This document shows positions 734 to 42,853 of a stretch of 64,000 bases of DNA, piece after piece. Positions within the stretch are counted from its first letter, which is position 1, and every line of letters starts with the position of its first letter. The stretch is taken from positions 412,249 through 476,248 of IMG/VR virus record IMGVR_UViG_3300018080_008436, one strand, 5' to 3'. A program made the translations under genes and the position numbers. The notes beneath the pieces were generated by a model that saw only the letters and a list, made by a program, of their open reading frames with translations, was not told the origin of the DNA and did not search any database.

Positions 734-1121
734 AATTCCCATCAATACTTTGGATGCAAAGTCCTTAACATTTGGTATGGTGGCTCCAAACGAAACGGCC
801 CAAACCAATATCGTACAGCTTTATGTACCAGATGCCGCCGCAATTACCAATATTCGACTTGCATTAATCGATACTGGAGGTATAATGTTTGGATCTACTA
901 CTTTTGGAGTAGATAACAGATCGTTTATCGACAATAATGTAGTACCCGAATCATTTTTTCAAGGTGTTAGCGACAAAAGCGTAAATTCGCCTTACAATAT
1001 ATCAGTAGCAAACCTAAATAGATTAGCCAGTGAGTACATATATCTGAATGTGGATATCCCAATTGGTCAAACTTTTATCGCTGGAACAATAAGATATCAA
1101 TGGCTTTTTGACTATGCATAG
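696..1121 (+). CDS. hypothetical beta-rich protein
   Basis: 141-aa ORF overlapping the previous gene in an operon-like arrangement. Confidence 0.6.
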   Translation: MTPITYLIQNRTRIPINTLDAKSLTFGMVAPNETAQTNIVQLYVPDAAAITNIRLALIDTGGIMFGSTTFGVDNRSFIDNNVVPESFFQGVSDKSVNSPYNISVANLNRLASEYIYLNVDIPIGQTFIAGTIRYQWLFDYA

Positions 1122-1128
1122 GGGTAAT

Positions 1129-3135
1129 ATGAGAGTACAAATACAACCAACAAAAGACGAACAAGAGCTTTTTGAACTATTAAGGAATACAGTTAAGAAA
1201 GTGGCCCCTGGAACTTCATTAAGAGTTGCAGGCGGGTGGGTTCGTGACAATCTTCTAGGGAAGAAGTCAAATGACATTGATTTCATGGTTGACAACATGT
1301 CTGGAGAGCAAATTGCTCGATTAATCACAAATGAGCTTGGTCTAAGTGGACCCCATGTTGTTCAAGCAAACCCAGATGCCTCCAAACATTTGGAAACCGC
1401 TGGAGCAGAAATCCCCATATCAAATGGCAAGGTGTTTGATCTTGATTTTGCCATCGCAAGACAAGAAATTTACCATGATGACTCAAGAATTCCTGAGATC
1501 AAACCAGCGACTCCAGAAGAAGACGCTTTCAGAAGGGATTTGACCATTAATTCTATGTTCTACAATATTATGACTGGAGAACTGGAAGATTTCACTGGAA
1601 GAGGAATGGAAGATCTTAAGAGTAGAACAATTAAAACTCCTGAAGACCCACTGAAAACATTCAAAGATGACCCTTTAAGAATTTTCAGAACTATTCGTTT
1701 CGCTTCAAGGTACAATGGTAATATTGACCCAGAAACACTTTCTGCTATGAATAATCCAGAATTACATAGCGAAATTAGAGAAAAAGTGTCAAAAGAGAGG
1801 ATTCAAGAGGAACTCTTCAAAACAATGAAGGGACCAAATCCTCTGATGGCCATCAATTTGCTGAAAGAAACTGGCATATTCAGAGACATCATAGAAGATG
1901 CTGTCAAAGGTAGTAAATTTGAAGGAAAAATCGCTCCACTTGACATGGAGCAGAACAATCCTCATCATGAGCTAACGGTTTGGGGTCACACCCTAAAAGT
2001 TGTCGAAAATCTGTTGATGTACTATCCAGACACAGATCCTGAGAAACGTGCTATCATGATCCTAACAGCGGTTATGCATGATTTAGGGAAGCTTTATTAC
2101 GACATTCATGTCGATAAGGGGGATCAAACTTCTTACTATGGACATGCAGACGCTAGTGGTGAAATTGCTGAGATGATTATGCGTTACTTGAAGTTTAATA
2201 ACAAAATGATTGATCAAGTCTCCAAGATGTCAAAGCATCATATGAGAGTTCACTTGGTTGAAAATGACAAAAACTTAAGTGGCGAAGGAAAACGTTTGGC
2301 ATTTTTCAGAAAATTTATTAGAAAGATGCTGGCTGAAGGTATCGATGCGATGGACATAATGAATCTTTCTATTGCTGATGCTTATAGCAAAGGTCACAAA
2401 ATTGTTGATCCTTCAGTAGTTAAAAACTATCAACTTTTAAAAACTCAACTTGAGCAGGCTTTGGCTTCAATAAGTGTTGACCAAAATCAAAAGAAAGTTG
2501 TCCCAGTGTTGAATGGACGAGAAATTATGACTATTCTAAACATTAATCCTGGGTGCATGGTTGGTGATGCGACTAGATTTGTTTATGAGTTAATGGATGA
2601 GAATCCTAAAATCACCAAAGATGAGGCCGCAGAAAGATTAGTTGAAGAGTTCGCACACAAAATTGACAACGAAGAAAAAATTAGGCAAGCTTCTGCATGT
2701 CCAAAGCATCTTCTGTTTAGCAAGATTGATGAAATAAAAGAAGCGATTAATGATGAGAATTGTGACAGAGCAATTACAATTATGACCACTCTCAAGAAAG
2801 AGAATGAAGATGACGAAAGTGTATATGCAGAAATTGCGAACCGTATGCTTGATGTCTTGCTTATAGACCGTTCGAAAAGGAACTTTGAACTTCTAGGTTA
2901 TGTATTTGACAAAGCAATAGATAACTTCTTTGATGTAGAAGTTTGCATACCTGTTCTTGGAATCTTGTTACTCTTAAAGACAGGTACAAAAGAAGAGCAT
3001 ATAGAAACATTATGTGAAAGAATGAAGAACATGGCGAATGATAAATTACAAGTCATGTTAAAGAAATTACCTGATGATGCTTATCATAAGAAATTCATAA
3101 AAAGGTTAAAGAATGGAAGATGTAACTGCAAATGA
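1129..3135 (+). CDS. cca: class II CCA-adding tRNA nucleotidyltransferase with HD domain and C-terminal extension
   Basis: VAGGWVRDNLLG..DIDF, RRDLTINSM and DDPLRIFRTIRFA motifs; HH..VWGHT and MHDLGK HD domain; LNGREIM...PG..VG tail; start MRVQ after AGGGG. Confidence 0.9.
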   Translation: MRVQIQPTKDEQELFELLRNTVKKVAPGTSLRVAGGWVRDNLLGKKSNDIDFMVDNMSGEQIARLITNELGLSGPHVVQANPDASKHLETAGAEIPISNGKVFDLDFAIARQEIYHDDSRIPEIKPATPEEDAFRRDLTINSMFYNIMTGELEDFTGRGMEDLKSRTIKTPEDPLKTFKDDPLRIFRTIRFASRYNGNIDPETLSAMNNPELHSEIREKVSKERIQEELFKTMKGPNPLMAINLLKETGIFRDIIEDAVKGSKFEGKIAPLDMEQNNPHHELTVWGHTLKVVENLLMYYPDTDPEKRAIMILTAVMHDLGKLYYDIHVDKGDQTSYYGHADASGEIAEMIMRYLKFNNKMIDQVSKMSKHHMRVHLVENDKNLSGEGKRLAFFRKFIRKMLAEGIDAMDIMNLSIADAYSKGHKIVDPSVVKNYQLLKTQLEQALASISVDQNQKKVVPVLNGREIMTILNINPGCMVGDATRFVYELMDENPKITKDEAAERLVEEFAHKIDNEEKIRQASACPKHLLFSKIDEIKEAINDENCDRAITIMTTLKKENEDDESVYAEIANRMLDVLLIDRSKRNFELLGYVFDKAIDNFFDVEVCIPVLGILLLLKTGTKEEHIETLCERMKNMANDKLQVMLKKLPDDAYHKKFIKRLKNGRCNCK

Positions 3136-11397: not shown

Positions 11398-11925
11398 TTA
11401 AGCCTTTGCCCAAGCCAAGCCTACCCCATTTACACCTAAAGCATTTTTACATGCTTCTATCGTTGTACCTTTAGTTATTACATTATCAACAAAATAAACA
11501 TTCTTGTTGTCTAAATCCATAACGTCTGCATCATCTCTGACAATCATATTGTGCTCTTCAACCGTGTAATTAGGAAGATTTTGCTTTCTCCTTTGATGAG
11601 ATGGTTCTATACTAGAAGACCGACCCAATGGATCATATATCTCAGATCCAGTTATTTTAGCAATTGCCTCGCATAAAAGCATGTTTGACCCCCTATCCCC
11701 TGATGATGATGGAACTGGTACTAAGAGGCTATTAGATGCAACATATTTCGCCATAGTATCAGCCGCTATCTTAATGGCATCTGAATTTTTGTTCTTTATT
11801 TCGTAAGATATCTTTCTAACAAAAGCTTCTTGCTGTGATAGTTCTCTTCTTCTAGGAGAAATATATTGATAAATGGCTATATTTTTGCCATCATTTAAAA
11901 ATTGAGCTTTTTTATACCAGTTCAT
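11398..11925 (-). CDS. phosphoribosyltransferase-fold (ComF-like) protein with MNWYKKAQ leader
   Basis: LLVPVPSS and PRPP-binding loop VYFVDNVITKGTT. Confidence 0.75.
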   Translation of the reverse strand: MNWYKKAQFLNDGKNIAIYQYISPRRRELSQQEAFVRKISYEIKNKNSDAIKIAADTMAKYVASNSLLVPVPSSSGDRGSNMLLCEAIAKITGSEIYDPLGRSSSIEPSHQRRKQNLPNYTVEEHNMIVRDDADVMDLDNKNVYFVDNVITKGTTIEACKNALGVNGVGLAWAKA

Positions 11926-17300: not shown

Positions 17301-17460
17301 CAGCTTTGGTTGATGCTTCTTTAGTTTCTTTCTTCTCTTCTTTTTCTTCGCATTCTTCATCCTCTTCGTCACACTCTTCTTCTCCAGCGACAGCTTGCTT
17401 CAGAGCATTTCTAAGTTCGTCCTTAACGTTAACTTTTGCTACTGTAGAGGCTTCAGCAGT
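14371..17460 (-). CDS. C-terminal scaffold/core part of the prohead protease-scaffold protein (Zn-ribbons, internal repeats); reached by a -1 shift
   Basis: Frame is open 72 codons upstream of the TTG at 17244, up to ~17463, with no ATG/GTG; many CxxC pairs; repeated VEAGVPR...EGADNID units. Confidence 0.7.
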   Translation of the reverse strand, partial: TAEASTVAKVNVKDELRNALKQAVAGEEECDEEDEECEEKEEKKETKEASTKAVVKNEKAKRDAEREEILASLESRKRVQAQEEILNPEKLDGADIVIETDFEELGSQKTSATFKKDIVKFAKGALATENMKLASITNVTIDGNTIQIAVQTDAGEESVEIPIGEEVAPIEEEIVPEGDLVGEGIEDGLDADIEMENLNQVAYNNKKMKRTAQSPMGGGMPGAAGEVAAPGAPEEGLDAPPMGEDPALQALTTGNEDELEDEIPTVGEKQAPWSICPECGSSDVDVTKEDDGGIIGNCQNCGAEYEALIKKEIEFRIIKPTKSVGEEGMEDVEGPEEPEEMPALPVAAQTRIDKDSIVRIAANREAHGDVCPACGNKKCDVIASGDGRTKCECGQCGTSFEKNLIVSSKNPSNGLLRVEWDLSPDNSCPECKEEARKFASKLKVVGMLKTAQANADTFPTANCVERIARTYGGNTVARFGPCKDKPLAECVCKELKRLGFTKVRQMKKLADTLMQVDPMDECIEDQKSKGHDVVQATSICNCIKKKFAKEESDNIYVQAFADEAKEGKIALSQYDLATMNELFIQKEENLAKKAQAILEEVEIGDDLEPLDSVDVEVDEIIEEPEEVAVESVTITGDNLEVVENTGDEALEEDIAEDVAFEAEEVPEGEDMETFDTDALAEALAMNSSRVRRSGAESNIKLAGKPKLIKTIEKDVEAGVPRSKATMMNEGADNIDVPMAKPQVPRSNATMGHEGADNINPPAGLPDVAVDSSYMGIEKATQSDMPAINNEIKGTVIAEAEKNLKEAQRQLALAKKMKEVDTVEGDVEAGVPRADASLGHEGADNIDVKMANPDVPRAKATMGQEGPDNIDVNAPKPDVPIDNAYMGVEKETQSDMPGINDKYLKQVQQKREEQLARIKEARKEEALRTASWLAANNRIASDKSTFDNVVTALAQFEVDKIASVAETMFPVKAVKTASTEQQVKTAGTGLPAIVIQSQPAQEPSFQDKIAGAFTIGSKLLNDNLIDNDQR

Positions 17461-19940
17461 TTTTCATCAACTTTCTTACTGATACTCTGTTCACCAAGTT
17501 CGCCATCTGAGAGAACATCAACAGCATCAATAATAGTATCTGGATTAATAGTGTCATCAGATGCAATTACTCTCAACTTGTTAACAAGACAGTGTTCGAC
17601 TTCAGTTGGGGAAGCAGTTGCAACTTTTACGTTTTTGGCGTTCCAATAGGATGATCGCTTCGAAAAAGAAGCAGATTCAGAAGATTGAGGTTCTTCTAAC
17701 AAAGATCCTGCTAATCTTACACGTTCCTTAGTGGTTGCAACGCAGTTGTTCGCAATTTCTTGCAATTCTTGTGGGGTTGCTCCAGTTTCAAGGGAAACCT
17801 CTGCAAACGCTTCAACGACAGCATCCATGTGTTCCTTAGCGGACTTAAATAGAGATGCATCTCTGTTGGCCTGACGTGCCCATGCAGGATCGACATTGTC
17901 TAACTGCTTCTGGGTGATTACTTCAGGCTCATTGTTGGTACGATAGCCTTCACTATCCAATTGTTTTTGGGTGACAGTATGTTTGTCCTCATCCTTACGG
18001 GGAGATACACCATTACTATCATTATCCAATTGTTTTTGGGTAATGACTTCAGGTTCGTCATCCTGTCTGGGGTTCAGCTTCAACTCGCTGTCATCCAACT
18101 GTTTCTCAGTGATAACTTCTTTTTCACCTTTTCTTGGACTCGCGTTATCATTGCTGTCCAGTTGTTTTTGTGTGATGACCTGCTGTTCTTCCCCAGTGCG
18201 ACCGTGATACAACTCGGATCTGTGATCTTCGAGTTGTTTCTGAGTGATCACTTCTGGAGTTGCAAGAACGGTATTGGCACCAGCCTCTTTAGTTTCTTTA
18301 CTCATTCTTTCTACTCCTTCTCTTGGATTTGTTTTGGCGAATAAATCTAAAAATTGATGAGCCGCTACTTTTGGCGACTCACTGATTAAATTCTTATCTT
18401 GATCTGACAGATCGTCATAGGTCCAAATTTGCATTCTGTCAGAGTTAGTGTCCTCCGCGACGATGATAAATGAATCGTCTCTATTTTTCACTGCGAGTTT
18501 TAAATTACCAATTTGCATTGATGGTACTTCTTTTATATACTCAAAAAAGCTTTGTTTTTCCTGCCACGAGTCAGATAAAACTTGCATAGCTTTTTCACGT
18601 TGTTTTTCTTTACTAGCTACGGTTCGTCTTTTTCCCATAGATTTAACTCCCGTTTTATTCATTTTATCGCACAGACTCGCGGCCTTTTGCAAAACAGAAG
18701 CTCCGAACTCATAATGATCTACGGCCTCATCTGCGACTCTCCTAATTAAATGTGAACTCTGGGCGGCTGGACGCATAGGTGCGGTAATAGGCATCTGCGG
18801 TGTATTTACTGGAGGTTGCCCTGGCGCTCCAGTTGTCGTTCCAACTTCCATCGCTTGTTCTGAAGCAACTGGCATTGGTGCGGCATCTCTTGGAGCCGTT
18901 TCCAATCCCCCTCCTGGTGTTGGTGGTACTTCCCCTGTTGGAGGCATACCTTCTTCTGGAGCGTTACCCTCGGTTCCAGGAACCTGAGATTCAACACTTC
19001 CATATCCAGCCCCTACTAATTCATCTGACCAAGTTTGTAGACTAGCAATAATATCTACTAAATCACTTGCAAATTCAACTTCAACTTGTTGTCGGTTCTT
19101 AATCAAGTTAACAGCAATGTTCTCTAATGTTTCAAGAACCTGATTAATCTGATCAATTTCTTCCTGACTTGCATTTTTCTCAAGTGCCGCAGTCTTAATC
19201 ATTCTAAGGTAATTCTCAACATTGGCAACTCTTGCAAGATAATCATCGTTTGGAATTATACCTTCAATATGGCAACTTGGGCAAGCAGGATCAACAACTC
19301 CACTTAACTCAATAAACTTGATCCCATAATTATGTTCAAATACTGGTTCGTCTTTGAATTCCTTCACTTCGCCAGTTCTAACGTTTCTGGCCCTACCAGT
19401 AAATTTTCTGCTCTTTCTATTTCTAATATGTTCGCAGTAATCTTCAGTTCTCTCAGCTTTGTTTTCGCAAATACTGCAAGTACTGTATTCAACTGAAGCA
19501 CCCATGGAGACTCCAGTCATATATCCTTGTTCAATACCGCGACAAATATGAGGATAAGCATCTCTATCTACAAAAGCTATTGTATAAACAGCATTATCAT
19601 CTTCGTTCCATTCGGCCCAGATGATCTTACCTTTAGCCTTTTCTATATCTTGATTTTCATGATTGGTAAAGAAAGGGACACCTTCGAAACTCTTATAAGC
19701 TTTAAGCAATTCTTCTTTCGAAAATGAATCACCATTACTATTAGGTTCGTCAGCTTTGATTGCTTTAGCCCTGAAAAATAAAGCATTTGGATGCTTTGTA
19801 ATTTCTGCTTGAACAATCTTTTCTTTCTCTGAACCAGGCTCTATCAAAACTCTGCCAGAGGCAGTTTTAATCATAACCTCGTCTTCCTTAGAAATTTGCT
19901 CTACAGGACAAGGTTCGGTTAAAGCAACTTTTATTAACAT
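17439..19940 (-). CDS. prohead (maturation) protease with scaffold extension
   Basis: NSNGDSF...FFTNH...AKGKI...GVSMGASVEYSTCSIC...CEHI...FIELSGVVDPA, typical of HK97-type prohead serine proteases; located between portal and MCP. Confidence 0.8.
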   Translation of the reverse strand: MLIKVALTEPCPVEQISKEDEVMIKTASGRVLIEPGSEKEKIVQAEITKHPNALFFRAKAIKADEPNSNGDSFSKEELLKAYKSFEGVPFFTNHENQDIEKAKGKIIWAEWNEDDNAVYTIAFVDRDAYPHICRGIEQGYMTGVSMGASVEYSTCSICENKAERTEDYCEHIRNRKSRKFTGRARNVRTGEVKEFKDEPVFEHNYGIKFIELSGVVDPACPSCHIEGIIPNDDYLARVANVENYLRMIKTAALEKNASQEEIDQINQVLETLENIAVNLIKNRQQVEVEFASDLVDIIASLQTWSDELVGAGYGSVESQVPGTEGNAPEEGMPPTGEVPPTPGGGLETAPRDAAPMPVASEQAMEVGTTTGAPGQPPVNTPQMPITAPMRPAAQSSHLIRRVADEAVDHYEFGASVLQKAASLCDKMNKTGVKSMGKRRTVASKEKQREKAMQVLSDSWQEKQSFFEYIKEVPSMQIGNLKLAVKNRDDSFIIVAEDTNSDRMQIWTYDDLSDQDKNLISESPKVAAHQFLDLFAKTNPREGVERMSKETKEAGANTVLATPEVITQKQLEDHRSELYHGRTGEEQQVITQKQLDSNDNASPRKGEKEVITEKQLDDSELKLNPRQDDEPEVITQKQLDNDSNGVSPRKDEDKHTVTQKQLDSEGYRTNNEPEVITQKQLDNVDPAWARQANRDASLFKSAKEHMDAVVEAFAEVSLETGATPQELQEIANNCVATTKERVRLAGSLLEEPQSSESASFSKRSSYWNAKNVKVATASPTEVEHCLVNKLRVIASDDTINPDTIIDAVDVLSDGELGEQSISKKVDEKLLKPLQ
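17895..18260 (-). repeat. six degenerate (E/Q)VITQKQL protein repeats in the scaffold
   Basis: EVITQKQLEDHR, QVITQKQLDSN, EVITEKQLDDS, EVITQKQLDND, TVTQKQLDSE, EVITQKQLDNV. Confidence 0.85.
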
Positions 19941-26168: not shown

Positions 26169-26209
26169 GCACACATTCCTGATTTAGATTTTTTTTATTA
26201 TACAAAATC

Positions 26210-28956: not shown

Positions 28957-30981
28957 TTATTCCTCTTGAAATCCTTTGGTCTCTTTGAGCTTCTCAACAT
29001 CCGTGACAGAGTCCTCGAACTCAACCTGGATTTCTTCAGGATCATCCTTGTAATAATCCCTATCGCCAAGTTTAAGCTCTCCAGTCGTTGCTCCCTTGAC
29101 AGAACCTTCGCTGTTCTCAAGAACCTTGACGAATGATTCAGTTGTCCATGGAATACCTCGGTCATCACCGTACTTATTGAAGTAGTAACGATGAGCCGCC
29201 ATTTCAATCATAAGCATCTCAACATCACGAACGGTGAACTTCTTAGTCATTGCCAATTCAGACAACTTTTCGAGATCCAGACCGTTGATTGCTCTCTGGA
29301 AGTCTTCTTGATCCTCAAAACCAATAACATCAACGCCTCGATTGTGCATTCTTCTTGCGCAAGTCTCAAATGTTTCCATCATACTTGCGGAATCGAAGTT
29401 ACCAATGTCAATGGCAAGGTCAGTACGACCAGAACGAAGCAGAGGTCCAGTGAAATTCTCAAGATGGTTCGTAGTCAAAACGAGGAAGATATTTCTTTTA
29501 ACAAAAAGATTCTCTTCCTGATTGTTCTGAAGCCAGTTCATGAACTCACTCTCAACCTGCTTATGAGCTTCATGCATTCCGCCACCTCGATCATTGGTGG
29601 AACCCATAGCTCTGTCATACTCATCAATTCGAATGATAATATGACTGGTTGAAGCGATTTTATCCAAAGACTTTCTCATCTGTTCGGAACCCTGACCAAT
29701 CCACTTTGAATGACATGCATTGATGTTGAAGTCCCAAACATCAATATCAAGCAATCCAGCCAAGTGAACGGGAAATGCAGACTTACCAACACCGCCCTGA
29801 CCATACAGAACAATAACATGAGGCATTCTGGTTCGAAGATCCTCAATGCTTTTATCGAGGACAGACATTTGGTCTCTTGCCTCATTAATCTTCTTGGCTG
29901 ATTTATTCTTGCTCTTCTGATGGATCTCTTTCTTCTCGTCAGAAAGAAGATCAACCTCATCAAAATCACGCATCAACTTCTGAACATCATAGGTGAAGTT
30001 ACTGTTCTTTGGACAGATATAGTCTTCCCAAGGTCTTCCCTGCAACTGAGTCAAACCAAAGCCATCCTTCATCAGGTTCTTATTGATCTTTGTTCTCAGA
30101 AGTCTCAGGGCTTCTCCCATGTCAATGTAGTCCTGACCGTTTGCATCTGTTGTAATCGCCCTTGGAAGGCAATATCCAAGAACATCACAAGCTTCACTGT
30201 AATTCAGACCAGCGAGTTTGCGGATTGTCTGGTTCATCTGAGATTCGGTGATCGAAAGACGAATGTTCTTTGCGCTGTAGCTCTTGACGTAAACATTGAA
30301 AAGGTGTTTAACCTCAAACTCGTCAACAGTACCAATCTCAACAACATCGACTTTAAAAGGGAACTTGAGTGGGACATTCGAAATCAGAACCAAAACACAT
30401 CCAAGACGAACGGTTGGGTTTCTGAATTTATCAAACAGGAACAAAGCTCTGGTGTCTACAACTCCTGGCTCTTCTGGTTTGCAGAAATCAAGGCAGAAAT
30501 CGACATTACTAATCAACAGAATTTTATCTCTGCACCCACCAGCTTCAGACTTTTTGCGAAGATCCTTTCTGGTTACAAGGCCATTCTCTTTTCTCCTGAT
30601 CTCACCAGTTTGTTCATTGATATCTGGCTCAGGATCTCCATTTGGCCCATTCTTGATTTTGTAAGCGCCATAGATCAACTCATCAAAGAAACGAACACTT
30701 GCTCCTTTCCCAGGTCTACCATGCTGTAACTCAACAGCATCAAATTTGGTTGTTCCATTGAAGAGTTGCTCTACACAGAACGTTTTCTTCAGGATGGACT
30801 GAACGAGGTAAGGATTTTCATGATTGACAACGAAATTGACGATACCAGTTATAGAGATGGAGCAAGTAGACTTCATCTCTTTAATTACCTTATTAATACC
30901 TGGGCTGTTTTCCAGCAGGTAAGGCATTCCAGTTTTCTTCTGCTTGTTGTCTTCTGTGGCACTTTTCTTGTCTTCGCTCAT
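28957..30981 (-). CDS. AAA+ ATPase, Ycf46-like
   Basis: Walker A GQGGVGKS, SKWIGQGSE pore loop, Walker B IRIDEYD, sensor TTN, Arg finger LLRSGRTD; degenerate N-terminal AAA domain. Confidence 0.8.
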   Translation of the reverse strand: MSEDKKSATEDNKQKKTGMPYLLENSPGINKVIKEMKSTCSISITGIVNFVVNHENPYLVQSILKKTFCVEQLFNGTTKFDAVELQHGRPGKGASVRFFDELIYGAYKIKNGPNGDPEPDINEQTGEIRRKENGLVTRKDLRKKSEAGGCRDKILLISNVDFCLDFCKPEEPGVVDTRALFLFDKFRNPTVRLGCVLVLISNVPLKFPFKVDVVEIGTVDEFEVKHLFNVYVKSYSAKNIRLSITESQMNQTIRKLAGLNYSEACDVLGYCLPRAITTDANGQDYIDMGEALRLLRTKINKNLMKDGFGLTQLQGRPWEDYICPKNSNFTYDVQKLMRDFDEVDLLSDEKKEIHQKSKNKSAKKINEARDQMSVLDKSIEDLRTRMPHVIVLYGQGGVGKSAFPVHLAGLLDIDVWDFNINACHSKWIGQGSEQMRKSLDKIASTSHIIIRIDEYDRAMGSTNDRGGGMHEAHKQVESEFMNWLQNNQEENLFVKRNIFLVLTTNHLENFTGPLLRSGRTDLAIDIGNFDSASMMETFETCARRMHNRGVDVIGFEDQEDFQRAINGLDLEKLSELAMTKKFTVRDVEMLMIEMAAHRYYFNKYGDDRGIPWTTESFVKVLENSEGSVKGATTGELKLGDRDYYKDDPEEIQVEFEDSVTDVEKLKETKGFQEE

Positions 30982-32060: not shown

Positions 32061-32975
32061 TCACCTAATAATGTTTTTTAACCTGTCCCACAAATTTTGT
32101 GGTTCTTCTATTGTTTGTTCTTGTTCTGGAGAGGTTTCTCCTTCATCAACTTTTATTTCTAGACTGATTATGTTATCAATCAAGAAGTTCTTTGGCGTTC
32201 CCCCTTCAATACTCCATCCACTTCCATTAATAGTAGGAGAAGCATCATAAGCCGTAAAATATCTTCCGTTAGGTCCAGACTTAATTGGATACCCTTCACC
32301 TGGAACTGGCATCAATCTTCTTGGTGGTAAAACCCTTCCGCTCAAAGTCCAGTAGACGATATCCATCTCCTGGTTATTTTGTTCTGCATACTTGATCTTA
32401 GCTGTCTGGTTCATGTTGTACTCAACAACTTGATTGGGCTGTGGAGGCTGTTCATACATTTGTTGTTGTTCAGGAGTAACTGGTATTTCTTCCATTGGGG
32501 CTTCTTGAAGAACTTGCTCTTCTTCGGGAGTTAACTCACCCTCTAAATCATTCGGCTCCATCAAAGGATCTTCATTCTCAACATTAACTTGAGCAAATCT
32601 TGAAAGATTCTTGTAAGTAACATTGCTTTTAAGAGTTCTCACCCAATCATCTCCATCAAACATCTGGAAACCAACATCAATATTGTTTTTGGAAAACCAC
32701 CCTTTATTAACTTCAACAGCATATTGGCATGGGCTTGAGGAAGTCGTCATTCTTGTACTCATTGGGGCCATGGATTCTATTTGCATAATCTTTCCACTAT
32801 CATCAAGAAAAGCAATATCCAATGGAATATAGGTGTTCTGCATCCAAAAACTTTGGGGATGCTTTCTAGGAAAGATGAATATCATTCCATCATTTTCCCC
32901 CAGTGTTTTACGATCCATTAAACCATAAGATCGTTTATGGGGAGTATCCGCTATTTCCAAACTCAAATAAGCCAT
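32061..32975 (-). CDS. DUF192 domain fused to a WYL-like domain
   Basis: EIADTP.KRSYGLM.R..L..NDGMIFIF...FWMQNTYIPLDIAF...YAVEVNKG (DUF192); C-terminal MDIVY...RRLMP...YFTAYD...KNFLIDNIISLE (WYL-like). Confidence 0.75.
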   Translation of the reverse strand: MAYLSLEIADTPHKRSYGLMDRKTLGENDGMIFIFPRKHPQSFWMQNTYIPLDIAFLDDSGKIMQIESMAPMSTRMTTSSSPCQYAVEVNKGWFSKNNIDVGFQMFDGDDWVRTLKSNVTYKNLSRFAQVNVENEDPLMEPNDLEGELTPEEEQVLQEAPMEEIPVTPEQQQMYEQPPQPNQVVEYNMNQTAKIKYAEQNNQEMDIVYWTLSGRVLPPRRLMPVPGEGYPIKSGPNGRYFTAYDASPTINGSGWSIEGGTPKNFLIDNIISLEIKVDEGETSPEQEQTIEEPQNLWDRLKNIIR

Positions 32976-33678: not shown

Positions 33679-36063
33679 TTACTCTCCAAAATCCAATATT
33701 TTATCTAATTCATACTTCTTAAAAAGTTCCTGGGCTTCCTCTTCATTGAGTGACTCTATCTTTGCCTTCGCAAACTGCAAGAAGTCAACAGAATACTTTT
33801 CCAAAAGAACGGGAGCGTATTTTCCAATAGCTTCCTCTAATTCACTATCAATATCAAGACCAAGCTTGATTGACAAATACAACGCTCTCAATATAATGAA
33901 TGGGTTGAATGACAATACATCATCTGCATCCATGACCGTTTCGATATAATTATCTCCATTAAAAGGAGTGATGAACGATCCAGTGTAAGGGTTATATCCT
34001 CTAGCATTAATAGTGAAATCCTTGTTGCAAATATCATGCAATACATGGCTGGAAGAATCAAGATCCTGTTTTTTCATCCATCTCTCGATAGTTGGGATCT
34101 TTTGTCCTCCATTGAAACAAATCTTCACGCCTTTGTGATTAAAACAAAAACATCTAGTTGCTGGATCAATCTCAGAGACCTGTTCTCCCAATTCTTCAGC
34201 CAACAAACTTCCGAATTTATGGCAGTTTTGGGATGAATCACTTGTAAATTCAAGTTCCTCAACTTCTGGAGATCTGTTCCCAAAAGATTTCTCTCTTGCA
34301 TAAGAACCGATAGCATAAACATCTTTGATATCGTATTCATGAGCCACACTCTTTGCGGCATCCATAATGCAACTAATAGCATCTTCAAGCGTTGGTCTGC
34401 AACCAACAACCTTTGACATAATCTCTCTTAGTTGTTCATCATTGTTCTGAATAGCATCTTCGACTTTTTCAATTTCTTCACTACCAACTCCCCTATGAAT
34501 CCAGCAGGAGTATATCTCTTCTCCATCGGACTCTCCCAAAGAAAACATATCGACTCCAATAGGACTGCGCCCCATTGACTTTTCAATAACTGACAACATA
34601 TCTTCACTACAAACAATCCTAGTTGCCTTCATATCGCCCCTAAGAATGATTGATCGTATTTTTCTCAACATATCAACAATATGTCCAAGCCCACCCGAAG
34701 CAAAACGTTTTGCAGGATGAGTGTTGCTTAAGTCTCTTGTTGAATCAAACCAACTCTCTGGTTTGAACCTTGGCTCGATCCATCTGTAATAAAACCCCTT
34801 GATGTCATATGTTGGGTTATATCTAGGTTGTGACTTTATCCAGTCCTCTTCTTCTGAAAAACATTCATCTCTGTCATCCCAGGCCATGACTCTGTCACCT
34901 AACCCAGGAATAGTTGATCCATCAGAAATTTCGAGATTATTGTACCACCCAAAAACTGTCGCCATCTTTGTCATCTTTGATGCTTGCTTTAAAGGCATCA
35001 TCAATGGTTGTGGTCTAGTATCTTCCAGAAGATCTTCAGTGATTCTATATCCAGTATCGTCTTTGAGCCTGTCTTTGTCAAGCAATTCTTCAAAAATGAG
35101 ATCAGGATCTAATTCCCAATCACCTTCAGTAAATTTCCTCAACTGAACTTCATAGATGTCATGTTCTGGAGATAGGTCTGGAGGGAGTGGAGCCTGATAC
35201 TGTCTGCCAAGCATTTCTTCGATTGCTCGATTTTGATATTGATGGGCGATCATACCCCAATCTGGTTGGGCCTGGAAATTTGCTCCATGATCACCATATC
35301 TTCCTGACAAATCAGATCCTGAGGGAGGATAGAATGGAAAGTGGCTTTGAGCTTCTTTATACCAATTATTTGAGGCTCCTTGCCTTAAACTTAGTTCACC
35401 CTCTATGCTGTATTTCTGCTGAATCTCTCTCATGGCAGATTCAAGTAATGCTGTCTCAACTTGAGTTGGACCTGCTTCGTCTTCTGCCCCTTTAGCATGA
35501 GTGGCTTCGTGAGCCATTGTAGCGGCCATGTGAGCTATCATAAGATCTTGTCTTAGCTCTGCATGCATTTCTGGTGGAACGATGTCCTGAAGGTTCCTAA
35601 AGGATTGCTCCATCTCATTACGAGTGTCTGCTACATTCAGTCCTAGAACTGATCCTCCTTTACTTTCTAGATCAGCATATACTTGCTGGATTTCATTACG
35701 GATAGTTTCTTGGTCTTTCTCTTCTTTAGTGTCATACGCTCGAAGCATTCCATCTTCTTCGACAATTTCATAACCTCTTGATTCAAGTCTTTTTTGAAGT
35801 TCTTGGGTTTTGACTGCCCTATCTAGTGACGGAACATAAACTCCATAAACACCAGCTTTCGCGAAGTTGAACATATAAACAATATTCTGCAAAAGATTTG
35901 AGTCGAATCGATTGACTAAGTCAACTGATTTCTGGGCATCGCCAAATTGGGAAGAGATGTTGGAGATGTTAACACTTGGGCTTCCGATCAAACTACCTTT
36001 ATACTCTGGAGCATCACCAGAGTAATACCCTCCGTAGTCTTGAGATACTTTTATGATTTTCAT
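33679..36063 (-). CDS. multidomain protein: MKIIKVSQ leader, HExxH domain and degenerate CCA/poly(A)-polymerase domain
   Basis: MAHEATH; internal NNWYKEAQ; VYAIGSYARE...ELEF...DICNKDFTINA...NPFIILRAL; AGG-N19-GAATAA at 36100-36124. Confidence 0.7.
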   Translation of the reverse strand: MKIIKVSQDYGGYYSGDAPEYKGSLIGSPSVNISNISSQFGDAQKSVDLVNRFDSNLLQNIVYMFNFAKAGVYGVYVPSLDRAVKTQELQKRLESRGYEIVEEDGMLRAYDTKEEKDQETIRNEIQQVYADLESKGGSVLGLNVADTRNEMEQSFRNLQDIVPPEMHAELRQDLMIAHMAATMAHEATHAKGAEDEAGPTQVETALLESAMREIQQKYSIEGELSLRQGASNNWYKEAQSHFPFYPPSGSDLSGRYGDHGANFQAQPDWGMIAHQYQNRAIEEMLGRQYQAPLPPDLSPEHDIYEVQLRKFTEGDWELDPDLIFEELLDKDRLKDDTGYRITEDLLEDTRPQPLMMPLKQASKMTKMATVFGWYNNLEISDGSTIPGLGDRVMAWDDRDECFSEEEDWIKSQPRYNPTYDIKGFYYRWIEPRFKPESWFDSTRDLSNTHPAKRFASGGLGHIVDMLRKIRSIILRGDMKATRIVCSEDMLSVIEKSMGRSPIGVDMFSLGESDGEEIYSCWIHRGVGSEEIEKVEDAIQNNDEQLREIMSKVVGCRPTLEDAISCIMDAAKSVAHEYDIKDVYAIGSYAREKSFGNRSPEVEELEFTSDSSQNCHKFGSLLAEELGEQVSEIDPATRCFCFNHKGVKICFNGGQKIPTIERWMKKQDLDSSSHVLHDICNKDFTINARGYNPYTGSFITPFNGDNYIETVMDADDVLSFNPFIILRALYLSIKLGLDIDSELEEAIGKYAPVLLEKYSVDFLQFAKAKIESLNEEEAQELFKKYELDKILDFGE

Positions 36064-37020: not shown

Positions 37021-38082
37021 TTATCTTGCTACTTGAATACCATTCTTTTCGCAAAATTCGATGGCGTATATTGAGAATACTCCAGCACTCAATCCGTAGT
37101 TGTCGTTGTCTCCAACAATTGCAGTTATTACTCCGATAACCTTACCATCATGACGATTGATAATTGGACCGCCACTGTTTCCTGGTAATATTGCGAGATC
37201 TAAAAACATGTATAGAGGTGCTCCATTATGAGAATAGATCTCCCTGTCAAGAGAGCTAACATAACCGAAAGTTGTGTTGTTTTCGAATCCATGAGGACTT
37301 CCAACTGCAAAAATTTCATCTCCGACATTAACGATTTGATCGAATTCAAAAGGTTTTGCATTGATATCGGCCTTCAGTAAAGCTAGGTCTTTAGCTCCAT
37401 CAAAGGCTATAACCTCTGCGTTAACCATCTGATCTCCATCTTTGATCAGTACCCTTATCATATCCTCATATTCAGAGAAGTCAAGCGAGCTTTCAGTATT
37501 TTTGTTGTAATTTTTTACGACATGGGCGCAAGTAAGGAAATAATTAGGGGCTACGCAGAAAGCAGAACCCGTTTCCTCAGTATTCGTGCTGAAGTTCTGT
37601 GACTTTACAACAAACGTCTTTTCAAGAGCCTCATCAACTTGATTTGGTTCTGGTTCAGCTTGCGCTACTCTAGAGATCCATTTGACAAGAACTCCCCTCT
37701 CTTCCATCTTTCTTCGATATTGTTGAGCCGATTCCAAAGATGGGAAAGTTTTATAGCCACCTCTAACCTTTAACTTCCAAACCTCTTTATCACCAGAATT
37801 ATTAGTAAGGTTTCTGAAGATGTCTAAATCTCTTTCTCTTCTTTTGTAATCGTCACCCTCATCTTTGTAAGATCCAGGTTGAGATTCTTCGTTCCTTGAC
37901 CAATCTCCCCAATCACCTTGTTGACCTGGGAGTTTATATTGTTTGCCAGTCAATACATCCCATATGGTATGCACATTATTGAAGGGCATAACGGATTTTG
38001 GAGTAGTGGGACTTAAGCCAGAGCCTGGATATAGAATCTCAGGCATTGTTGTGCGATAAGCTTTTTTCTTTTGTTTGCCCAT
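37021..38082 (-). CDS. trypsin-like (S1/HtrA-type) serine protease with N-terminal extension
   Basis: GSAF...FLTCAHVV, DLALLK, GNSGGP triad; AGG-N19-GAATAA at 38116-38140. Confidence 0.85.
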   Translation of the reverse strand: MGKQKKKAYRTTMPEILYPGSGLSPTTPKSVMPFNNVHTIWDVLTGKQYKLPGQQGDWGDWSRNEESQPGSYKDEGDDYKRRERDLDIFRNLTNNSGDKEVWKLKVRGGYKTFPSLESAQQYRRKMEERGVLVKWISRVAQAEPEPNQVDEALEKTFVVKSQNFSTNTEETGSAFCVAPNYFLTCAHVVKNYNKNTESSLDFSEYEDMIRVLIKDGDQMVNAEVIAFDGAKDLALLKADINAKPFEFDQIVNVGDEIFAVGSPHGFENNTTFGYVSSLDREIYSHNGAPLYMFLDLAILPGNSGGPIINRHDGKVIGVITAIVGDNDNYGLSAGVFSIYAIEFCEKNGIQVAR

Positions 38083-40200: not shown

Positions 40201-42036
40201 CTAAAATCTCATCCTAACAGTTACAGGTTCTGGAAGAGCAGGGTTCAGTCCATCAGTAGCAGAAGAAACAGCCCCTACTAAGCAATCAACTACATCATCT
40301 GTCTTCACATCTGCATTTTTATCTGGCAGAAGAGAAATTCCTCTTGCAATTCTTTTGAATTTTAAGTGTTGCATCTCTGCTAACATATATGAAGCATGTC
40401 CATCATCATCATAAAGATAAATTTCAGGATTTGGTTGATACTCCATCATCATCTTCATATTTCTATATAATTTCTGTTTAACACTTCTGTTATATTGAAT
40501 CTTTTGACAATTTACTCCATGACTCCTCAAAAACTGCAAACTGTGTACAGACTGAAAGTCATCATAAGTAACTCTCAATGGTCTAAAGATTTTGCAAATA
40601 GTTAGAACATCTCTATCAATCTCATGGAATTGTAATCCAATACCTGGAACTGGTTTCCAGATCCATACGCCAGCTAATTCAACCATCCATCTCTTTTCCC
40701 CCTGATTGTTTCTATATTTCTTAGCGGCAATCAAAACCATACTGAAGTTATTTCCGCCATTGGCTGGATCAACATGAGCATAATAATTGTATCCTGGTGC
40801 TGGTTTGGCATGAGGGCCAAGATCTGCCCTTACACATCTTTCAAGCAATCCTTCCTCAAAATAGTTACCATAAATACCGCCACTAGCCCATTGAGCGCCA
40901 TACTCAATAGCAAACATTTCTGGGTTACTCTCTCTATCACCAACCATCTCTTTGTTATAAAAATCAATATCATCATTTACACACCAAGTTGGCAACTGAA
41001 ACGATAAGATAGAATCATCTTCTAATGATCTTCGATACATATCATAGAAAATACCCATCCTATTGTTCGGTGATGATATCATCACTATTCGAGCCGCATT
41101 ATATTTGTAGAATTTAGATAATGATGGCTTTAATCTGTTGAAGAAATAGGTCCCTGTTACCTTACCACTCTCATCATAGAATGCAATCTCGTCAAACAGA
41201 ATAAGAATAGCACTATATCCAGCAAGTGAGTCTGGATTACTATGACCACAAAGAAGTAGAATAGATCCCGCAACTTCAATGTCAACTCCCTGACTTTTCT
41301 TTTCTAAGTCAGAGTCAGTATACAAACGAATCTCCGAAGAAATTGATTTAGCGATTCGTCCTTTGAAAAAAGGAGAGTTTCTAATTCTAGCCTGAATCTG
41401 TCCAAACAAACGTCCAGCCTGAGATTGTGACAAGGCAACATTAATAATTGCAATTTCATCATCACTAGGTAGATTATAGTAGCTATGGGGATTACCCTCA
41501 TTAATAACTAGTAACTTGTACGCTTCATACACAGTTATGATTGAAGCCATCAAGGTTTTACTTCCACGTCTACCTAAGACAAGATGCAACATACTAAAAT
41601 ATTCAGGTCGTCTGTCTTCTGGCTTCTTCCCCTCATTTTCATCATTCCCCTTGGCCTTCTCATCGTGGAACCTGTCCATCTCGATCATTTTTTTGATAAC
41701 CTCTTTGATGTTCCTTTCATAAGTAACACCTTCAAGAGTCTCATCTTCTTCATTACCGTAAAGCCACTCCCACTCTTCTTTATTGAGATGAAGGTCTTCA
41801 TTTCCTATAGTGTTCTTGTAGAAGCACTTAAGGATAACTCTTTGGGAAGTCCAGAGATCAAGCTGATTCTCTTCTGATGGTAAGTTTAGGTAGTCTGGAT
41901 GATCACAAAACGTTATGATATCGACTATCTCTTTGTAACCCTTGTTCTTTTTCAGAATCGGGTTTTTGGTATTAATCTGAAGTATTGCTTCTTCAAGTGG
42001 ATTAATAGCTTTCTGCTTCTTCTGGCGACTCGACAT
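40201..42036 (-). CDS. terL: terminase large subunit
   Basis: Walker A GRRGSKT, Walker B ILFDEIAF, motif III ISSP, EYGAQW, RNase H-like HVDPA and C-terminal DDVVD. Confidence 0.9.
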   Translation of the reverse strand: MSSRQKKQKAINPLEEAILQINTKNPILKKNKGYKEIVDIITFCDHPDYLNLPSEENQLDLWTSQRVILKCFYKNTIGNEDLHLNKEEWEWLYGNEEDETLEGVTYERNIKEVIKKMIEMDRFHDEKAKGNDENEGKKPEDRRPEYFSMLHLVLGRRGSKTLMASIITVYEAYKLLVINEGNPHSYYNLPSDDEIAIINVALSQSQAGRLFGQIQARIRNSPFFKGRIAKSISSEIRLYTDSDLEKKSQGVDIEVAGSILLLCGHSNPDSLAGYSAILILFDEIAFYDESGKVTGTYFFNRLKPSLSKFYKYNAARIVMISSPNNRMGIFYDMYRRSLEDDSILSFQLPTWCVNDDIDFYNKEMVGDRESNPEMFAIEYGAQWASGGIYGNYFEEGLLERCVRADLGPHAKPAPGYNYYAHVDPANGGNNFSMVLIAAKKYRNNQGEKRWMVELAGVWIWKPVPGIGLQFHEIDRDVLTICKIFRPLRVTYDDFQSVHSLQFLRSHGVNCQKIQYNRSVKQKLYRNMKMMMEYQPNPEIYLYDDDGHASYMLAEMQHLKFKRIARGISLLPDKNADVKTDDVVDCLVGAVSSATDGLNPALPEPVTVRMRF

Positions 42037-42853
42037 AATATTCCTCCAATATATAAACACAACCATTGTCTGATGGACAAAAGGTCAGAATTTTATTTCC
42101 AACCTTATATATTTCAAACAAATGAGTCGCATCTCCTTCAGAGGAAAGCATATGCACAGTATTGTCACTTAAAAAGAAAAGTTTGTTCTTGACATAATAT
42201 ATGTCTTTTAGGTCTTTGCAGTCATCGATAATTGTGTACGTTGAGTTTTTTCGTATCCCCCTTAAGCAATTGTTACCACTGTCTGCAAAACAGACAGTTT
42301 TTCCCATTATTGCAACTCCAGTTGGTTTAGAAATCCTCGTATTTTTTAAATTTGATATTGAGAATCCAGCCTTACCACAACCTATAAGTGGAAAGGCGTT
42401 CTCCTCATTCATTATAAAGCATCTGTGACAATTTGTAGTGCTCCAGATGACTTGATTTTCTAATGAAGTTACATAAGTCCTTGAGTCGCTTCTTCCAAGG
42501 ACTTTTCTTCTAAATTGTTTAGCACTGTTTTTTGAGATCAAATTCTCAAAATCCATCAACTCCAAATCGACTTTGTGAATTCGGCTACCACCTTCTGAAA
42601 CTATATATAAACAATCATAACTGGAATTATAGCATATCGAACTGAAAGTTGAAAAGTCTGGCTTCTCAGTATATGTGAGTTCATAACGCCAATCAGGATT
42701 GCAGTCGCCATTATTCATCTTTCCTATGCCATCATCATGTAGGAAAAACAGATTATCCCCAACACAACAAAAATCCTTGATCTCGAAGTTGATCTCGAAA
42801 TTTCGTTGTTTTCGGGTGGTAAGGTTCTTTTCTGTAAGTTTATAGATCATCAA
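42002..42853 (-). CDS. NHL-repeat/beta-propeller-like protein
   Basis: KPTGVAI...FADSGNNCLR NHL-like repeat. Confidence 0.55.
   Translation of the reverse strand: MMIYKLTEKNLTTRKQRNFEINFEIKDFCCVGDNLFFLHDDGIGKMNNGDCNPDWRYELTYTEKPDFSTFSSICYNSSYDCLYIVSEGGSRIHKVDLELMDFENLISKNSAKQFRRKVLGRSDSRTYVTSLENQVIWSTTNCHRCFIMNEENAFPLIGCGKAGFSISNLKNTRISKPTGVAIMGKTVCFADSGNNCLRGIRKNSTYTIIDDCKDLKDIYYVKNKLFFLSDNTVHMLSSEGDATHLFEIYKVGNKILTFCPSDNGCVYILEEYYVESPEEAESY

What the first reader, a model, noticed from the sequence alone, without database searches (positions are those of the whole stretch)
33679..36063. Leader-tagged polyprotein with a degenerate second CCA/PAP domain and an HExxH domain
Seen: the C-terminal ~230 aa parallels the intact CCA enzyme at 1129 but with GGWVRD changed to GSYARE, DxD to ELE, RRD to NKD and DPLR to NPFI. 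The N-terminal part has HEATH. Segments are separated by WYKEAQ, LKQAS/TKMA and KRFAS motifs. Inference: a packaged polyprotein processed into a metallopeptidase-like module and a tRNA-binding pseudo-enzyme or a nucleotidyltransferase with altered specificity, possibly countering tRNA-targeting defences.
Basis: partly seen in the sequence, partly recalled or inferred. Interest (0 to 1): 0.65.

Follow-up and report, generated by a model that had tools for sequence, protein, structure and literature searches.

The report
Modular phage head protein, dead CCA domain
A 794-residue protein in the head-gene block of a 476-kb marine phage joins a new zinc-hydrolase-like domain to a catalytically decayed copy of a tRNA CCA-adding enzyme, with its modules separated by a short motif that looks like this phage group's head-protein processing signal.

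Summary
The ORF at window 33679-36063 (-) encodes 794 aa. Its C-terminal 234 aa are a true class II CCA/poly(A)-polymerase head+neck fold. The active site is degenerate: GS for GG, ExE for DxD, Cys at the third carboxylate, NKD for RRD, NPFI for DPLR. The N-terminal domain is zincin-like, with an invariant HExxH...E.

More than 180 relatives exist, all from metagenomes and none annotated. The catalytic set was lost many times and the NTase was truncated in some lineages. The domain is nevertheless under strong purifying selection, so it reads as a pseudo-enzyme.

The junction motifs (leader MKIIKVSQ, WYKEAQ, KMAT, KRFAS) are conserved instances of one short motif, [KR]-x-A-[QST]. That motif is about 3-fold enriched only in this phage's head-gene block. 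It is conserved in position in orthologues, and it marks the exact points where modules are gained or lost in relatives.

The gene lies between terminase and portal, beside a trypsin-like protease. My best reading is a leader-tagged, proteolytically processed head ("polyvalent") protein. Packaging and cleavage are inferred, not shown.

Unexpectedly, the same zincin-like domain is also fused to the C-terminus of complete CCA-adding enzymes. This points to a specific zincin-CCA partnership.

The parts
36040..36063 (-). N-terminal leader MKIIKVSQ (aa 1-8) ending in a K-x-S-Q copy of the junction motif
   Evidence: Conserved as M-[KR]-I-x-[KR]-x-[AS]-Q in short homologues. The same K-x-A-Q precedes the DFGGYF block at the internal junction of long homologues. 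About 13 ORFs of the genome carry similar N-termini.
35368..36039 (-). Zincin-like domain (aa 9-232) with HEATH...E (aa 185-196; window 35476-35511)
   Evidence: pLDDT is 80-97 over aa 10-225. VIA gives Z 7.3 to YbeY 7y7o_A, 7.2 to the zincin-like 3e11_B, 6.5 to Wss1 and 6.1 to deuterolysin. H185, E186, H189 and E196 are invariant in 119 of 120 sequences. There is no Pfam or PHROG hit.
35347..35364 (-). Junction motif WYKEAQ (aa 234-239)
   Evidence: W115, Y116, K105/R15, A110 and Q114 of 120. The same WYKxAQ serves as an N-terminal leader or internal junction in other proteins.
34957..35346 (-). Middle segment 1 (aa 240-369), partly helical, ending in LKQAS/TKMAT (aa 358-369; window 34957-34992)
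   Evidence: pLDDT is 37-83. K366, A368 and T369 are conserved in 115, 113 and 108 of 120.
34696..34956 (-). Most conserved block (aa 370-456, LFGW...HPAKRFAS), ending in KRFAS (aa 452-456; window 34696-34710)
   Evidence: Mean column conservation reaches 0.93, but pLDDT is below 55. The block occurs, flanked by the same two motifs, in other architectures such as P0168 and P0170.
34384..34695 (-). Small alpha/beta subdomain (aa 457-560), DUF2023-like
   Evidence: High pLDDT. VIA gives Z 10.5 to 2guk_B with 102 of 112 residues aligned. The Atlas gives TM 0.64 to DUF2023. R482, W521 and E535 are invariant.
33682..34383 (-). Class II NTase head+neck (aa 561-794), degenerate active site, no body or tail domains
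   Evidence: establish the fold. G586-S587, E603-x-E605, C649, N680-K-D682 and N720-P-F-I correspond to GG, DxD, the third carboxylate, RRD and DPLR.
37021..38082 (-). Neighbouring trypsin-like serine protease (353 aa), a candidate processing enzyme
   Evidence: Pfam Trypsin_2 E 4e-23. It is syntenic in every homologous locus examined. It is fused to the N-terminus of homologue P0098. Its own R-x-A-Q site at aa 138 is conserved in 5 of 5 orthologues.
17439..19940 (-). 833-aa protein with a head-maturation-protease domain (aa 48-220), the other candidate processing enzyme
   Evidence: phrog_18299 E 1.9e-19. The protease domain is flanked by K-T-A-S at aa 25 and K-N-A-S at aa 255.
1108..3135 (+). 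Intact CCA-adding enzyme with HD domain (the comparator)
   Evidence: Pfam PolyA_pol 90.6 bits, PolyA_pol_RNAbd and HD. GGWVRD, DID, RRD and DDPLR are all present.

Best explanation
The gene encodes a modular head-associated protein of a clade of huge marine phages. It is a phage-type 'polyvalent' protein. It carries a short N-terminal leader and three or four internal copies of a short linear motif, [KR]-x-[AS]-[QST], often preceded by aromatic or hydrophobic residues (WYKxAQ, VKTAS). I infer that this motif is the capsid-targeting and cleavage signal read by a phage head protease. The candidates are the prohead-protease domain of the 833-aa protein, the adjacent trypsin-like protease, and the protein's own zincin domain. 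Processing would release four pieces: a zincin-like metallohydrolase (aa 9-239), two conserved middle pieces (240-369 and 370-456), and a DUF2023-like domain joined to a CCA-type NTase head+neck (457-794). In this phage the NTase part has lost the third catalytic carboxylate and the base-templating motif, so it most likely acts as a nucleotide- or RNA-3'-end-binding pseudo-enzyme rather than a polymerase. SHOWN: the folds, the residue states, conservation and purifying selection, head-module location and synteny, motif enrichment and positional conservation, and module gain and loss at the motif. INFERRED: cleavage, packaging or ejection, and any tRNA-directed activity.
For: Folds and homology.

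Active-site decay: the target has GS/ExE/C649. Only 26 of 112 relatives keep G[GS]+[DE]x[DE]+[DE]. At least 14 state changes are needed on a tree built from the N-terminal part, and 7 relatives are truncated after strand 5.

Purifying selection: pN is 0.079 in the NTase domain and 0.075 in the zincin domain, with pS about 0.76, for the closest pair.

Head module: TerL, trypsin-like protease, target, DUF192, AAA, portal, prohead-protease fusion and MCP. The order is conserved in loci at 40-70% identity.

Motif enrichment: 47 observed against 16.4 +/- 3.9 shuffled (maximum 30 in 200) in the head block. The rest of the genome gives 125 against 117.7 +/- 10. An unbiased sliding scan peaks only at 405-467 kb, with an observed/expected ratio of 2.9-3.4. 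Sites are conserved in position while their flanks vary, in the protease and in the 224-, 342- and 443-aa proteins.

Module boundaries: long homologues have leader + extra domain + KxAQ + DFGGYF. P0098 has the trypsin-like protease fused at that junction. P0180, in the same synteny, has a leader joined directly to the middle region with no zincin domain. P0226 has three internal SWYKxAQ motifs ahead of a CCA enzyme.

Precedent: T4 capsid-targeting sequences and multi-site processing of giant-phage ejection proteins (PMC5694885); polyvalent proteins with zincin-like MPTase hubs (PMC5512222).
Against: There is no virion proteome, no cleavage data and no cultured relative. The nearest phage record shares only 25% TerL identity.

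The motif is short, and its flanks (WY, FGW, HPAK) are also conserved, so it could instead be a binding or structural element at domain edges. The head-module boundaries for the first enrichment test were chosen after seeing the data, although the sliding scan confirms the peak.

The zincin assignment rests on Z of about 7 plus the motif, with no sequence-family match. The protease-substrate complex prediction gave no verdict. The middle region, which is the most conserved part, has no confident structure or function.
Confidence: 0.55

Rival explanations
1. The protein is itself a head-maturation or assembly protease. On this reading the zincin domain cuts the [KR]xA[QST] sites in scaffold, portal-proximal and internal proteins, and in itself. 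The rest of the protein anchors it in the prohead. It would not be an ejected effector.
For: The HExxH...E is invariant. The motif flanks the zincin domain on both sides in every architecture, including CCA-zincin fusions. The gene sits in the head module. Jumbo phages of another group carry an extra uncharacterised zincin-like peptidase that has been proposed to act in maturation (PMC7824862).
Against: P0180 and P0160 lack the zincin domain, yet P0180 keeps the same synteny and both keep the motif. A canonical prohead protease and a trypsin-like protease are both present, and each is flanked by the motif. Stand-alone zincin homologues occur outside recognisable head modules.
Confidence: 0.2
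2. It is an unprocessed cytoplasmic multidomain enzyme acting on tRNA 3' ends. The zincin-like hydrolase and the CCA-type domain would cooperate on one substrate, for example by removing a 3'-terminal adduct or trimming a damaged end. The conserved motifs would be interdomain structural or docking elements.
For: The same zincin-like family is fused to seven complete CCA-adding enzymes in the opposite order, and once to a 2H/Acb1-like phosphoesterase. That is a partner-specific 'Rosetta stone' pattern. The best structural match of the zincin domain is the RNase YbeY. The phage encodes 59 tRNAs and an intact CCA enzyme.
Against: The NTase lacks the body and tail domains that hold tRNA in known enzymes. 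Its catalytic set was lost repeatedly, and the domain is truncated in some lineages. This reading does not explain head-module-specific enrichment of the motif in unrelated proteins, nor the motif's use as an N-terminal leader.
Confidence: 0.2
3. The C-terminal domain is an active nucleotidyltransferase with altered specificity. It would use Glu-x-Glu for metal binding and a changed nucleotide pocket.
For: G-S and E-x-E fit the general Pol-beta superfamily pattern hG[GS]...[DE]h[DE]h. [RK]-D-F-T-I-N and the second Arg of motif D are nearly invariant. The domain is under purifying selection. About a quarter of relatives keep a full triad.
Against: The third carboxylate is Cys in the target and C/S/Y/F/R/L/M/H in its close relatives, so the position is not conserved. 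The motif D Asp and Arg that read the base are replaced in all members. One clade has lost everything after strand 5.
Confidence: 0.1

Closest known systems
Class II tRNA nucleotidyltransferases (CCA-adding and A-adding enzymes, poly(A) polymerase I; Pfam PF01743)
   Same: Head and neck fold: Z 19.7 to 4wby_A, and profile E 2.4e-17. The order of motifs A, B and D is recognisable.
   Different: There are no body or tail domains. GG is replaced by GS, DxD by ExE, the third carboxylate by Cys, RRD by NKD, and [ED]DxxR by xNPx[IV]. A DUF2023-like domain precedes the head. The target itself scores below the Pfam cut-off.
Phage-type polyvalent proteins with zincin-like MPTase hubs (Iyer et al. 2017, PMC5512222)
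   Same: Several unrelated domains sit in one polypeptide, one of them an HExxH zincin-like domain. The gene is encoded beside the portal and terminase genes. Those proteins are proposed to be packaged and cut into units. A relative (P0173) carries a 2H phosphoesterase domain, which that paper lists as a phage-type module.
   Different: That survey found Pol-beta NTases only as minimal versions in conjugative-element proteins, not class II CCA-type domains in phages. This zincin family matches no Pfam model. Its fusion partners are almost only CCA-type NTases rather than a diverse set.
T4 capsid-targeting sequences and processed ejection proteins of giant phages (T4 IPs/Alt; phiKZ, SPN3US; PMC5694885)
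   Same: A short N-terminal leader ends in the protease site. There are several sites per protein, and many head proteins share one cleavage motif.
   Different: The motif here is [KR]-x-A-[QST], not L/I-x-E or A/S-x-E. In form it is closer to the V/L-x-A|S sites of herpesvirus assemblin (my recollection, not tested). Cleavage here is inferred only.
YbeY and minimal zincins (3e11, Wss1/SprT, deuterolysin)
   Same: The three-strand-plus-helices zincin core, and the H-x-x-x-H-x-x-G spacing.
   Different: Z is only about 7 with 8-16% identity. The third ligand appears to be Glu at +7 after the second His. Inserts roughly double the domain size.

Membership tests
Class II tRNA nucleotidyltransferase / PolyA_pol head (PF01743) | Head+neck fold of the class II enzymes | tested here: met
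   AF2 pLDDT 93.6; VIA Z 19.7 to 4wby_A over 208 residues; Foldseek E 2e-9 to 1vfg
Class II tRNA nucleotidyltransferase / PolyA_pol head (PF01743) | Score above the Pfam gathering cut-off | tested here: not met
   The target scores 17.2 bits against a cut-off of 23, over a partial stretch. Homologue P0024 scores 41.8 bits over the full model.
Class II tRNA nucleotidyltransferase / PolyA_pol head (PF01743) | Motif A GGxVRD plus DxD and a third acidic residue on strand 5 | tested here: not met
   The target has GSYARE, E603-L-E605 and C649. Only 26 of 112 relatives keep the full set.
Class II tRNA nucleotidyltransferase / PolyA_pol head (PF01743) | Motif B RRD and motif D [ED]DxxR (ribose and base recognition) | tested here: not met
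   NKD, with N in 100 of 120 at the first position. N-P-x-[IV], with N in 111 of 120 and I/V in place of Arg.
Class II tRNA nucleotidyltransferase / PolyA_pol head (PF01743) | Body and tail domains that bind the tRNA acceptor/T arm | tested here: not met
   The protein ends after the neck. Matches cover chain residues of about 1-250 only.
Zincin-like metallopeptidases | HExxH on the active-site helix plus a downstream third metal ligand | tested here: met
   H185, E186, H189 and E196 are invariant in 119 of 120 sequences, and are also conserved in distant stand-alone and CCA-fused homologues. The ligand role of E196 is inferred.
Zincin-like metallopeptidases | Zincin core fold | tested here: inconclusive
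   The top VIA hits are all zincins or YbeY, but Z is only 6-7.3. Foldseek found nothing at E<0.001.
Zincin-like metallopeptidases | Peptidase activity | not testable with these tools
   Needs biochemistry. YbeY, the top match, is an RNase with the same fold.
Phage-type polyvalent proteins (PMC5512222) | Two or more disparate domains including an MPTase-type zincin, encoded in a portal/terminase neighbourhood | tested here: met
Phage-type polyvalent proteins (PMC5512222) | Packaged in the capsid and delivered with the DNA | not testable with these tools
   No proteome or cultured relative exists.
CTS-tagged internal head proteins (T4 type) | Short N-terminal leader ending in the head-protease motif, shared by several head proteins | tested here: met
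   The leader is conserved in homologues. The same motif is enriched about 3-fold only in the head module.
CTS-tagged internal head proteins (T4 type) | Leader removed by the prohead protease; mature protein present in virions | not testable with these tools
   The complex prediction gave no verdict.

The most novel reading that the evidence does not exclude
Huge marine phages use an undescribed sequence code, [KR]-x-A-[QST] with WYKxAQ or MKIxKxAQ leaders, to load and cut head cargo. One cargo class is a zincin-like hydrolase that is specifically partnered, in both domain orders, with CCA-type nucleotidyltransferases. This would mean phages deliver a tRNA-3'-end-directed repair or attack module, or its pseudo-enzyme decoy, with the genome at the moment of infection.
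Probability: 0.25. Interest if true: 0.8.

Novelty: new variant of a known kind. Interest (0 to 1): 0.6.

Why it matters
If the reading is right, it supplies three things.

1. A candidate cleavage and targeting code for a whole clade of uncultured huge phages. With it, head cargo could be predicted from sequence alone.

2. A clear case of an enzyme domain turning into a conserved pseudo-enzyme inside a virion-associated protein, with active-looking and dead versions on one tree.

3. A specific, previously unreported association between a new zincin-like family and CCA-adding enzymes. It suggests an unrecognised step in phage handling of tRNA 3' ends, an area now central to phage-defence biology.

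All three are testable with standard expression, mass spectrometry and tRNA assays.

Tried and rejected
PHROGs gave no hit for the target. Pfam gave no consistent hit for the zincin domain across 60 members.

tblastn against 50,697 phage records found only one weak partial hit.

Foldseek of the N-terminal model against the PDB, and the ESM Atlas shape search, gave nothing usable. The Atlas feature search on the alpha/beta subdomain gave only weak DUF2023 and other small alpha/beta matches.

The word-index search for stand-alone zincin proteins found only fragments. The exhaustive HMM search later showed that stand-alone and CCA-fused versions do exist, so that blank was a sensitivity limit.

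Genome-wide motif counts alone were only mildly enriched. The signal appeared only when the counts were resolved by region.

dN/dS could not be computed as a ratio because synonymous sites are saturated even in the closest pair. I report pN against pS instead.

The complex prediction used the trypsin-like protease domain, the prohead-protease domain and the WYKEAQ segment. It returned no verdict, with a score of 0.00, so it is no evidence either way.

The DUF192 site R-F-A-Q is not kept in the distant orthologue L002, so not every instance of the motif is conserved.

P0172, which seems to start at the third junction, lies 10 nt from a contig end and was not counted.

I considered that the N-terminal extension of long homologues was a fusion of one of the two small upstream genes, and rejected it. 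BLAST found no similarity, and the small genes are still present beside long forms.
Full report
**What is there.**
The window is the last 64 kb of a 476-kb virus record, estimated 98% complete, 39% GC. The phage occurs in sediment and seawater metagenomes. The finding is a single ORF on the minus strand, 33679-36063, encoding 794 aa.

**The C-terminal domain.**
- Taken alone, the protein barely resembles a CCA enzyme: Pfam PolyA_pol scores 17.2 bits against a cut-off of 23, and BLASTP against the window's intact CCA enzyme gives E 0.021.
- The family profile settles it. The word-index search found 139 homologues at 35-71% identity, none with a functional name.
- A profile of their C-terminal parts matches the A-adding enzyme 4wby at E 2.4e-17. 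It matches the window's own CCA enzyme at 97.7% probability and E 2e-12.
- The AF2 model of aa 456-794 has pLDDT 93.6. It superposes on class II enzymes at Z 19.7 over 208 residues, with Foldseek E 2e-9.
- Only the head and neck are present. The tRNA-holding body and tail are absent.
- The head is preceded by a roughly 100-aa alpha/beta subdomain that resembles the DUF2023 structure 2guk (Z 10.5).
- In addition, the acidic residue on strand 5 is Cys649. It aligns with the Glu of the KLEF strand in 4wby. Its role as the third metal ligand is my recollection of the family's chemistry.

**Is the domain dead, and is it drifting?**
- Across 120 aligned homologues, 26 of 112 full-length members keep G[GS], [DE]x[DE] and the strand-5 acid. 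Most of these have the canonical GG/DxD/D.
- The target's well-supported clade is almost entirely degenerate. The strand-5 position there varies among C, S, Y, F, R, L, M and H.
- On a tree built from the N-terminal part only, the catalytic state changes at least 14 times (5-7 changes are forced by strongly supported branches). Seven members have lost everything after strand 5.
- Motif D is N-P-x-[IV] in essentially all members. So even the 'full-triad' members are not ordinary CCA enzymes.
- The domain is nevertheless not decaying. In the closest pair (88.6% identical), pN is 0.079 in the NTase domain, against 0.075 in the zincin domain and 0.056 in the middle. pS is about 0.76, which is saturated.
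- Together this is the signature of a pseudo-enzyme retained for a non-catalytic role.

**The N-terminal half.**
- Residues 10-225 fold confidently, with pLDDT 80-97.
- Sequence methods find nothing, and Foldseek finds nothing.
- The exhaustive structural aligner puts YbeY, a minimal zincin (3e11), Wss1 and deuterolysin at the top, but only at Z 6-7.3.
- Combined with an HExxH and a Glu seven residues after the second His that are invariant in 119 of 120 sequences, I call it zincin-like. I give this about 80% confidence and leave its substrate open.
- Residues 232-455 are the best conserved in the protein, with column conservation up to 0.93. They are nevertheless modelled with pLDDT mostly below 55. 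Their role is unknown.

**The motifs.**
- The leader (K-V-S-Q), WYKEAQ, K-M-A-T and K-R-F-A-S are instances of one pattern: a basic residue, any residue, Ala (or Ser), then Gln, Ser or Thr. Each is conserved in more than 100 of 120 homologues.
- In homologues with an extra 200-380-aa N-terminal domain (one family of 52 sequences, absent from this genome), that domain is itself preceded by an MKIxKx[AS]Q or MNWYKKAQ leader. It is followed by K-x-A-Q immediately before the zincin block.
- One homologue has the neighbouring trypsin-like protease fused at that same junction.
- One orthologue in conserved synteny (P0180) has a leader joined directly to the middle region and no zincin domain.
- The 87-aa conserved block occurs in other proteins, bounded by the same two motifs.
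- Modules are therefore gained and lost exactly at the motif, and the motif is interchangeable between 'leader' and 'junction' positions.

**The motif beyond this protein.**
- The gene lies in the head block. In order along the minus strand: large terminase (40201-42066), trypsin-like protease (37021-38082), two small genes, the target, two small genes, DUF192 (32061-32975), an acidic protein, an AAA ATPase (28957-30981), portal (23946-26174), a 1305-aa protein, an 833-aa protein with a head-maturation-protease domain (17439-19940), a 957-aa protein, and the HK97-type major head protein (12036-12899).
- This order is kept in loci sharing 40-70% identity.
- In the head block the motif occurs 47 times, against 16.4 +/- 3.9 in composition-preserving shuffles (maximum 30 of 200). 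In the rest of the genome it occurs 125 times against 117.7 +/- 10.
- A sliding scan over all 595 ORFs shows one peak only, at 405-467 kb, with an observed/expected ratio of 2.9-3.4. Elsewhere the ratio never exceeds 1.96.
- Individual sites are conserved in position in orthologues while the surrounding residues change. Examples are the site ahead of the trypsin-like catalytic domain (5 of 5) and the VKTAS sites of the acidic, 342-aa and 443-aa proteins.
- The prohead-protease domain is bracketed by two such sites.
- This is the pattern expected for a head-maturation cleavage and targeting signal. T4 capsid-targeting sequences and the multi-site processing of phiKZ and SPN3US head proteins are the precedents (PMC5694885).
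- Which bond is cut, and by which of the three candidate proteases, I cannot say. The complex prediction gave no verdict.

**An unexpected link.**
- An exhaustive profile search with the N-terminal half found 188 relatives.
- Beyond the family itself and a more distant clade of the same architecture, the zincin-like domain occurs in two other settings. It occurs alone (about 180-270 aa). It also occurs at the C-terminus of seven complete CCA-adding enzymes, which have the PolyA_pol head, RNA-binding, HD and tRNA_NucTran2_2 domains; GGxVRD and DxD are seen in five of the seven and RRD in two.
- One family member carries an inserted 2H/Acb1-like phosphoesterase.
- So this zincin family is fused, in both orders, almost only to CCA-type nucleotidyltransferases. 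That argues for a specific functional partnership rather than a generic 'hub' peptidase.
- Four of the CCA-zincin proteins begin with a WY[KR] leader like the WY[KR]xAQ leaders (only P0228 has the full WYKTAQ), and one has three internal SWYKxAQ junctions.
- Stand-alone versions in another phage group sit among genes that begin MKxFKxWLxE. This resembles the T4 capsid-targeting sequence as I recall it. It is a lead, not a test.

**Comparison with known systems.**
- The closest described class is the phage-type polyvalent protein (PMC5512222). These are multidomain proteins with a zincin-like hub, encoded near the portal and terminase genes, and proposed to be packaged and cut into units.
- That survey did not report class II CCA-type domains in phage polyvalent proteins. 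It found Pol-beta NTases only as minimal versions in conjugative elements.
- A jumbo-phage survey mentions CCA enzymes and zincin-like peptidases separately, not fused (PMC7824862).
- No paper in the library contains the motif strings.
- I therefore rate this a new variant of a known kind.

**Verdict.**
The fold assignments and the pseudo-enzyme reading are well supported. Processing and packaging have good comparative support but no direct evidence. The tRNA-defence idea is untested.
- Interest is moderate to high. The reasons are the candidate head-cargo code and the zincin-CCA partnership, both of which can be tested directly.

Noticed in passing
window 3718-5475, 6505-6912, 10920-11318 (all -); L002 13348-13842 and 20252-20581: Several otherwise different proteins share a roughly 30-aa N-terminal element of the form MKI.K.A.GK.....S.KEW...GKKAGW. 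It looks like a second recurring N-terminal module in this phage group.
   Followed up: no
window 11398-11925 (-): The gene just downstream of the major head protein starts MNWYKKAQ. The same leader starts some long homologues of the target.
   Followed up: partly
window 32061-32975 (-); L010 6065-6409: A DUF192 gene sits close to the zincin/NTase gene in this family. It also sits next to a PolyA_pol gene and a CCA-zincin fusion in an unrelated phage contig. The repeated association is unexplained.
   Followed up: partly
window 44276-47779 (-) and 23946-26174 (-): The ribonucleotide reductase carries an intein with a LAGLIDADG domain. The portal gene ends in a DUF559/MTES_1575 endonuclease-like domain. 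Homologous loci have inteins in TerL-like and AAA genes instead.
   Followed up: no
window 58752-61835 and 61895-63943 (-): Two large ORFs begin with long serine-rich low-complexity repeats (SSSSSRD and SQSES units).
   Followed up: no
whole genome G000: The genome holds 59 tRNA genes covering all amino acids. 501 of 595 crude ORFs lie on one strand. The record is labelled provirus, but it looks like a near-complete free huge-phage genome.
   Followed up: partly
L008 (contig with stand-alone zincin P0251): About 10 of 22 genes, including the zincin gene, begin MKxFKxW[LF]xE. This is a different shared leader and is reminiscent of the T4 capsid-targeting sequence.
   Followed up: partly
L002 18644-19072: A PTH2 peptidyl-tRNA hydrolase gene sits in the homologous head block of a relative. 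It is absent at the matching place in this window.
   Followed up: no
window 14371-17244 (-): The 957-aa protein downstream of the prohead-protease gene carries ten copies of the [KR]xA[QST] motif. It is a candidate scaffold or core protein.
   Followed up: partly
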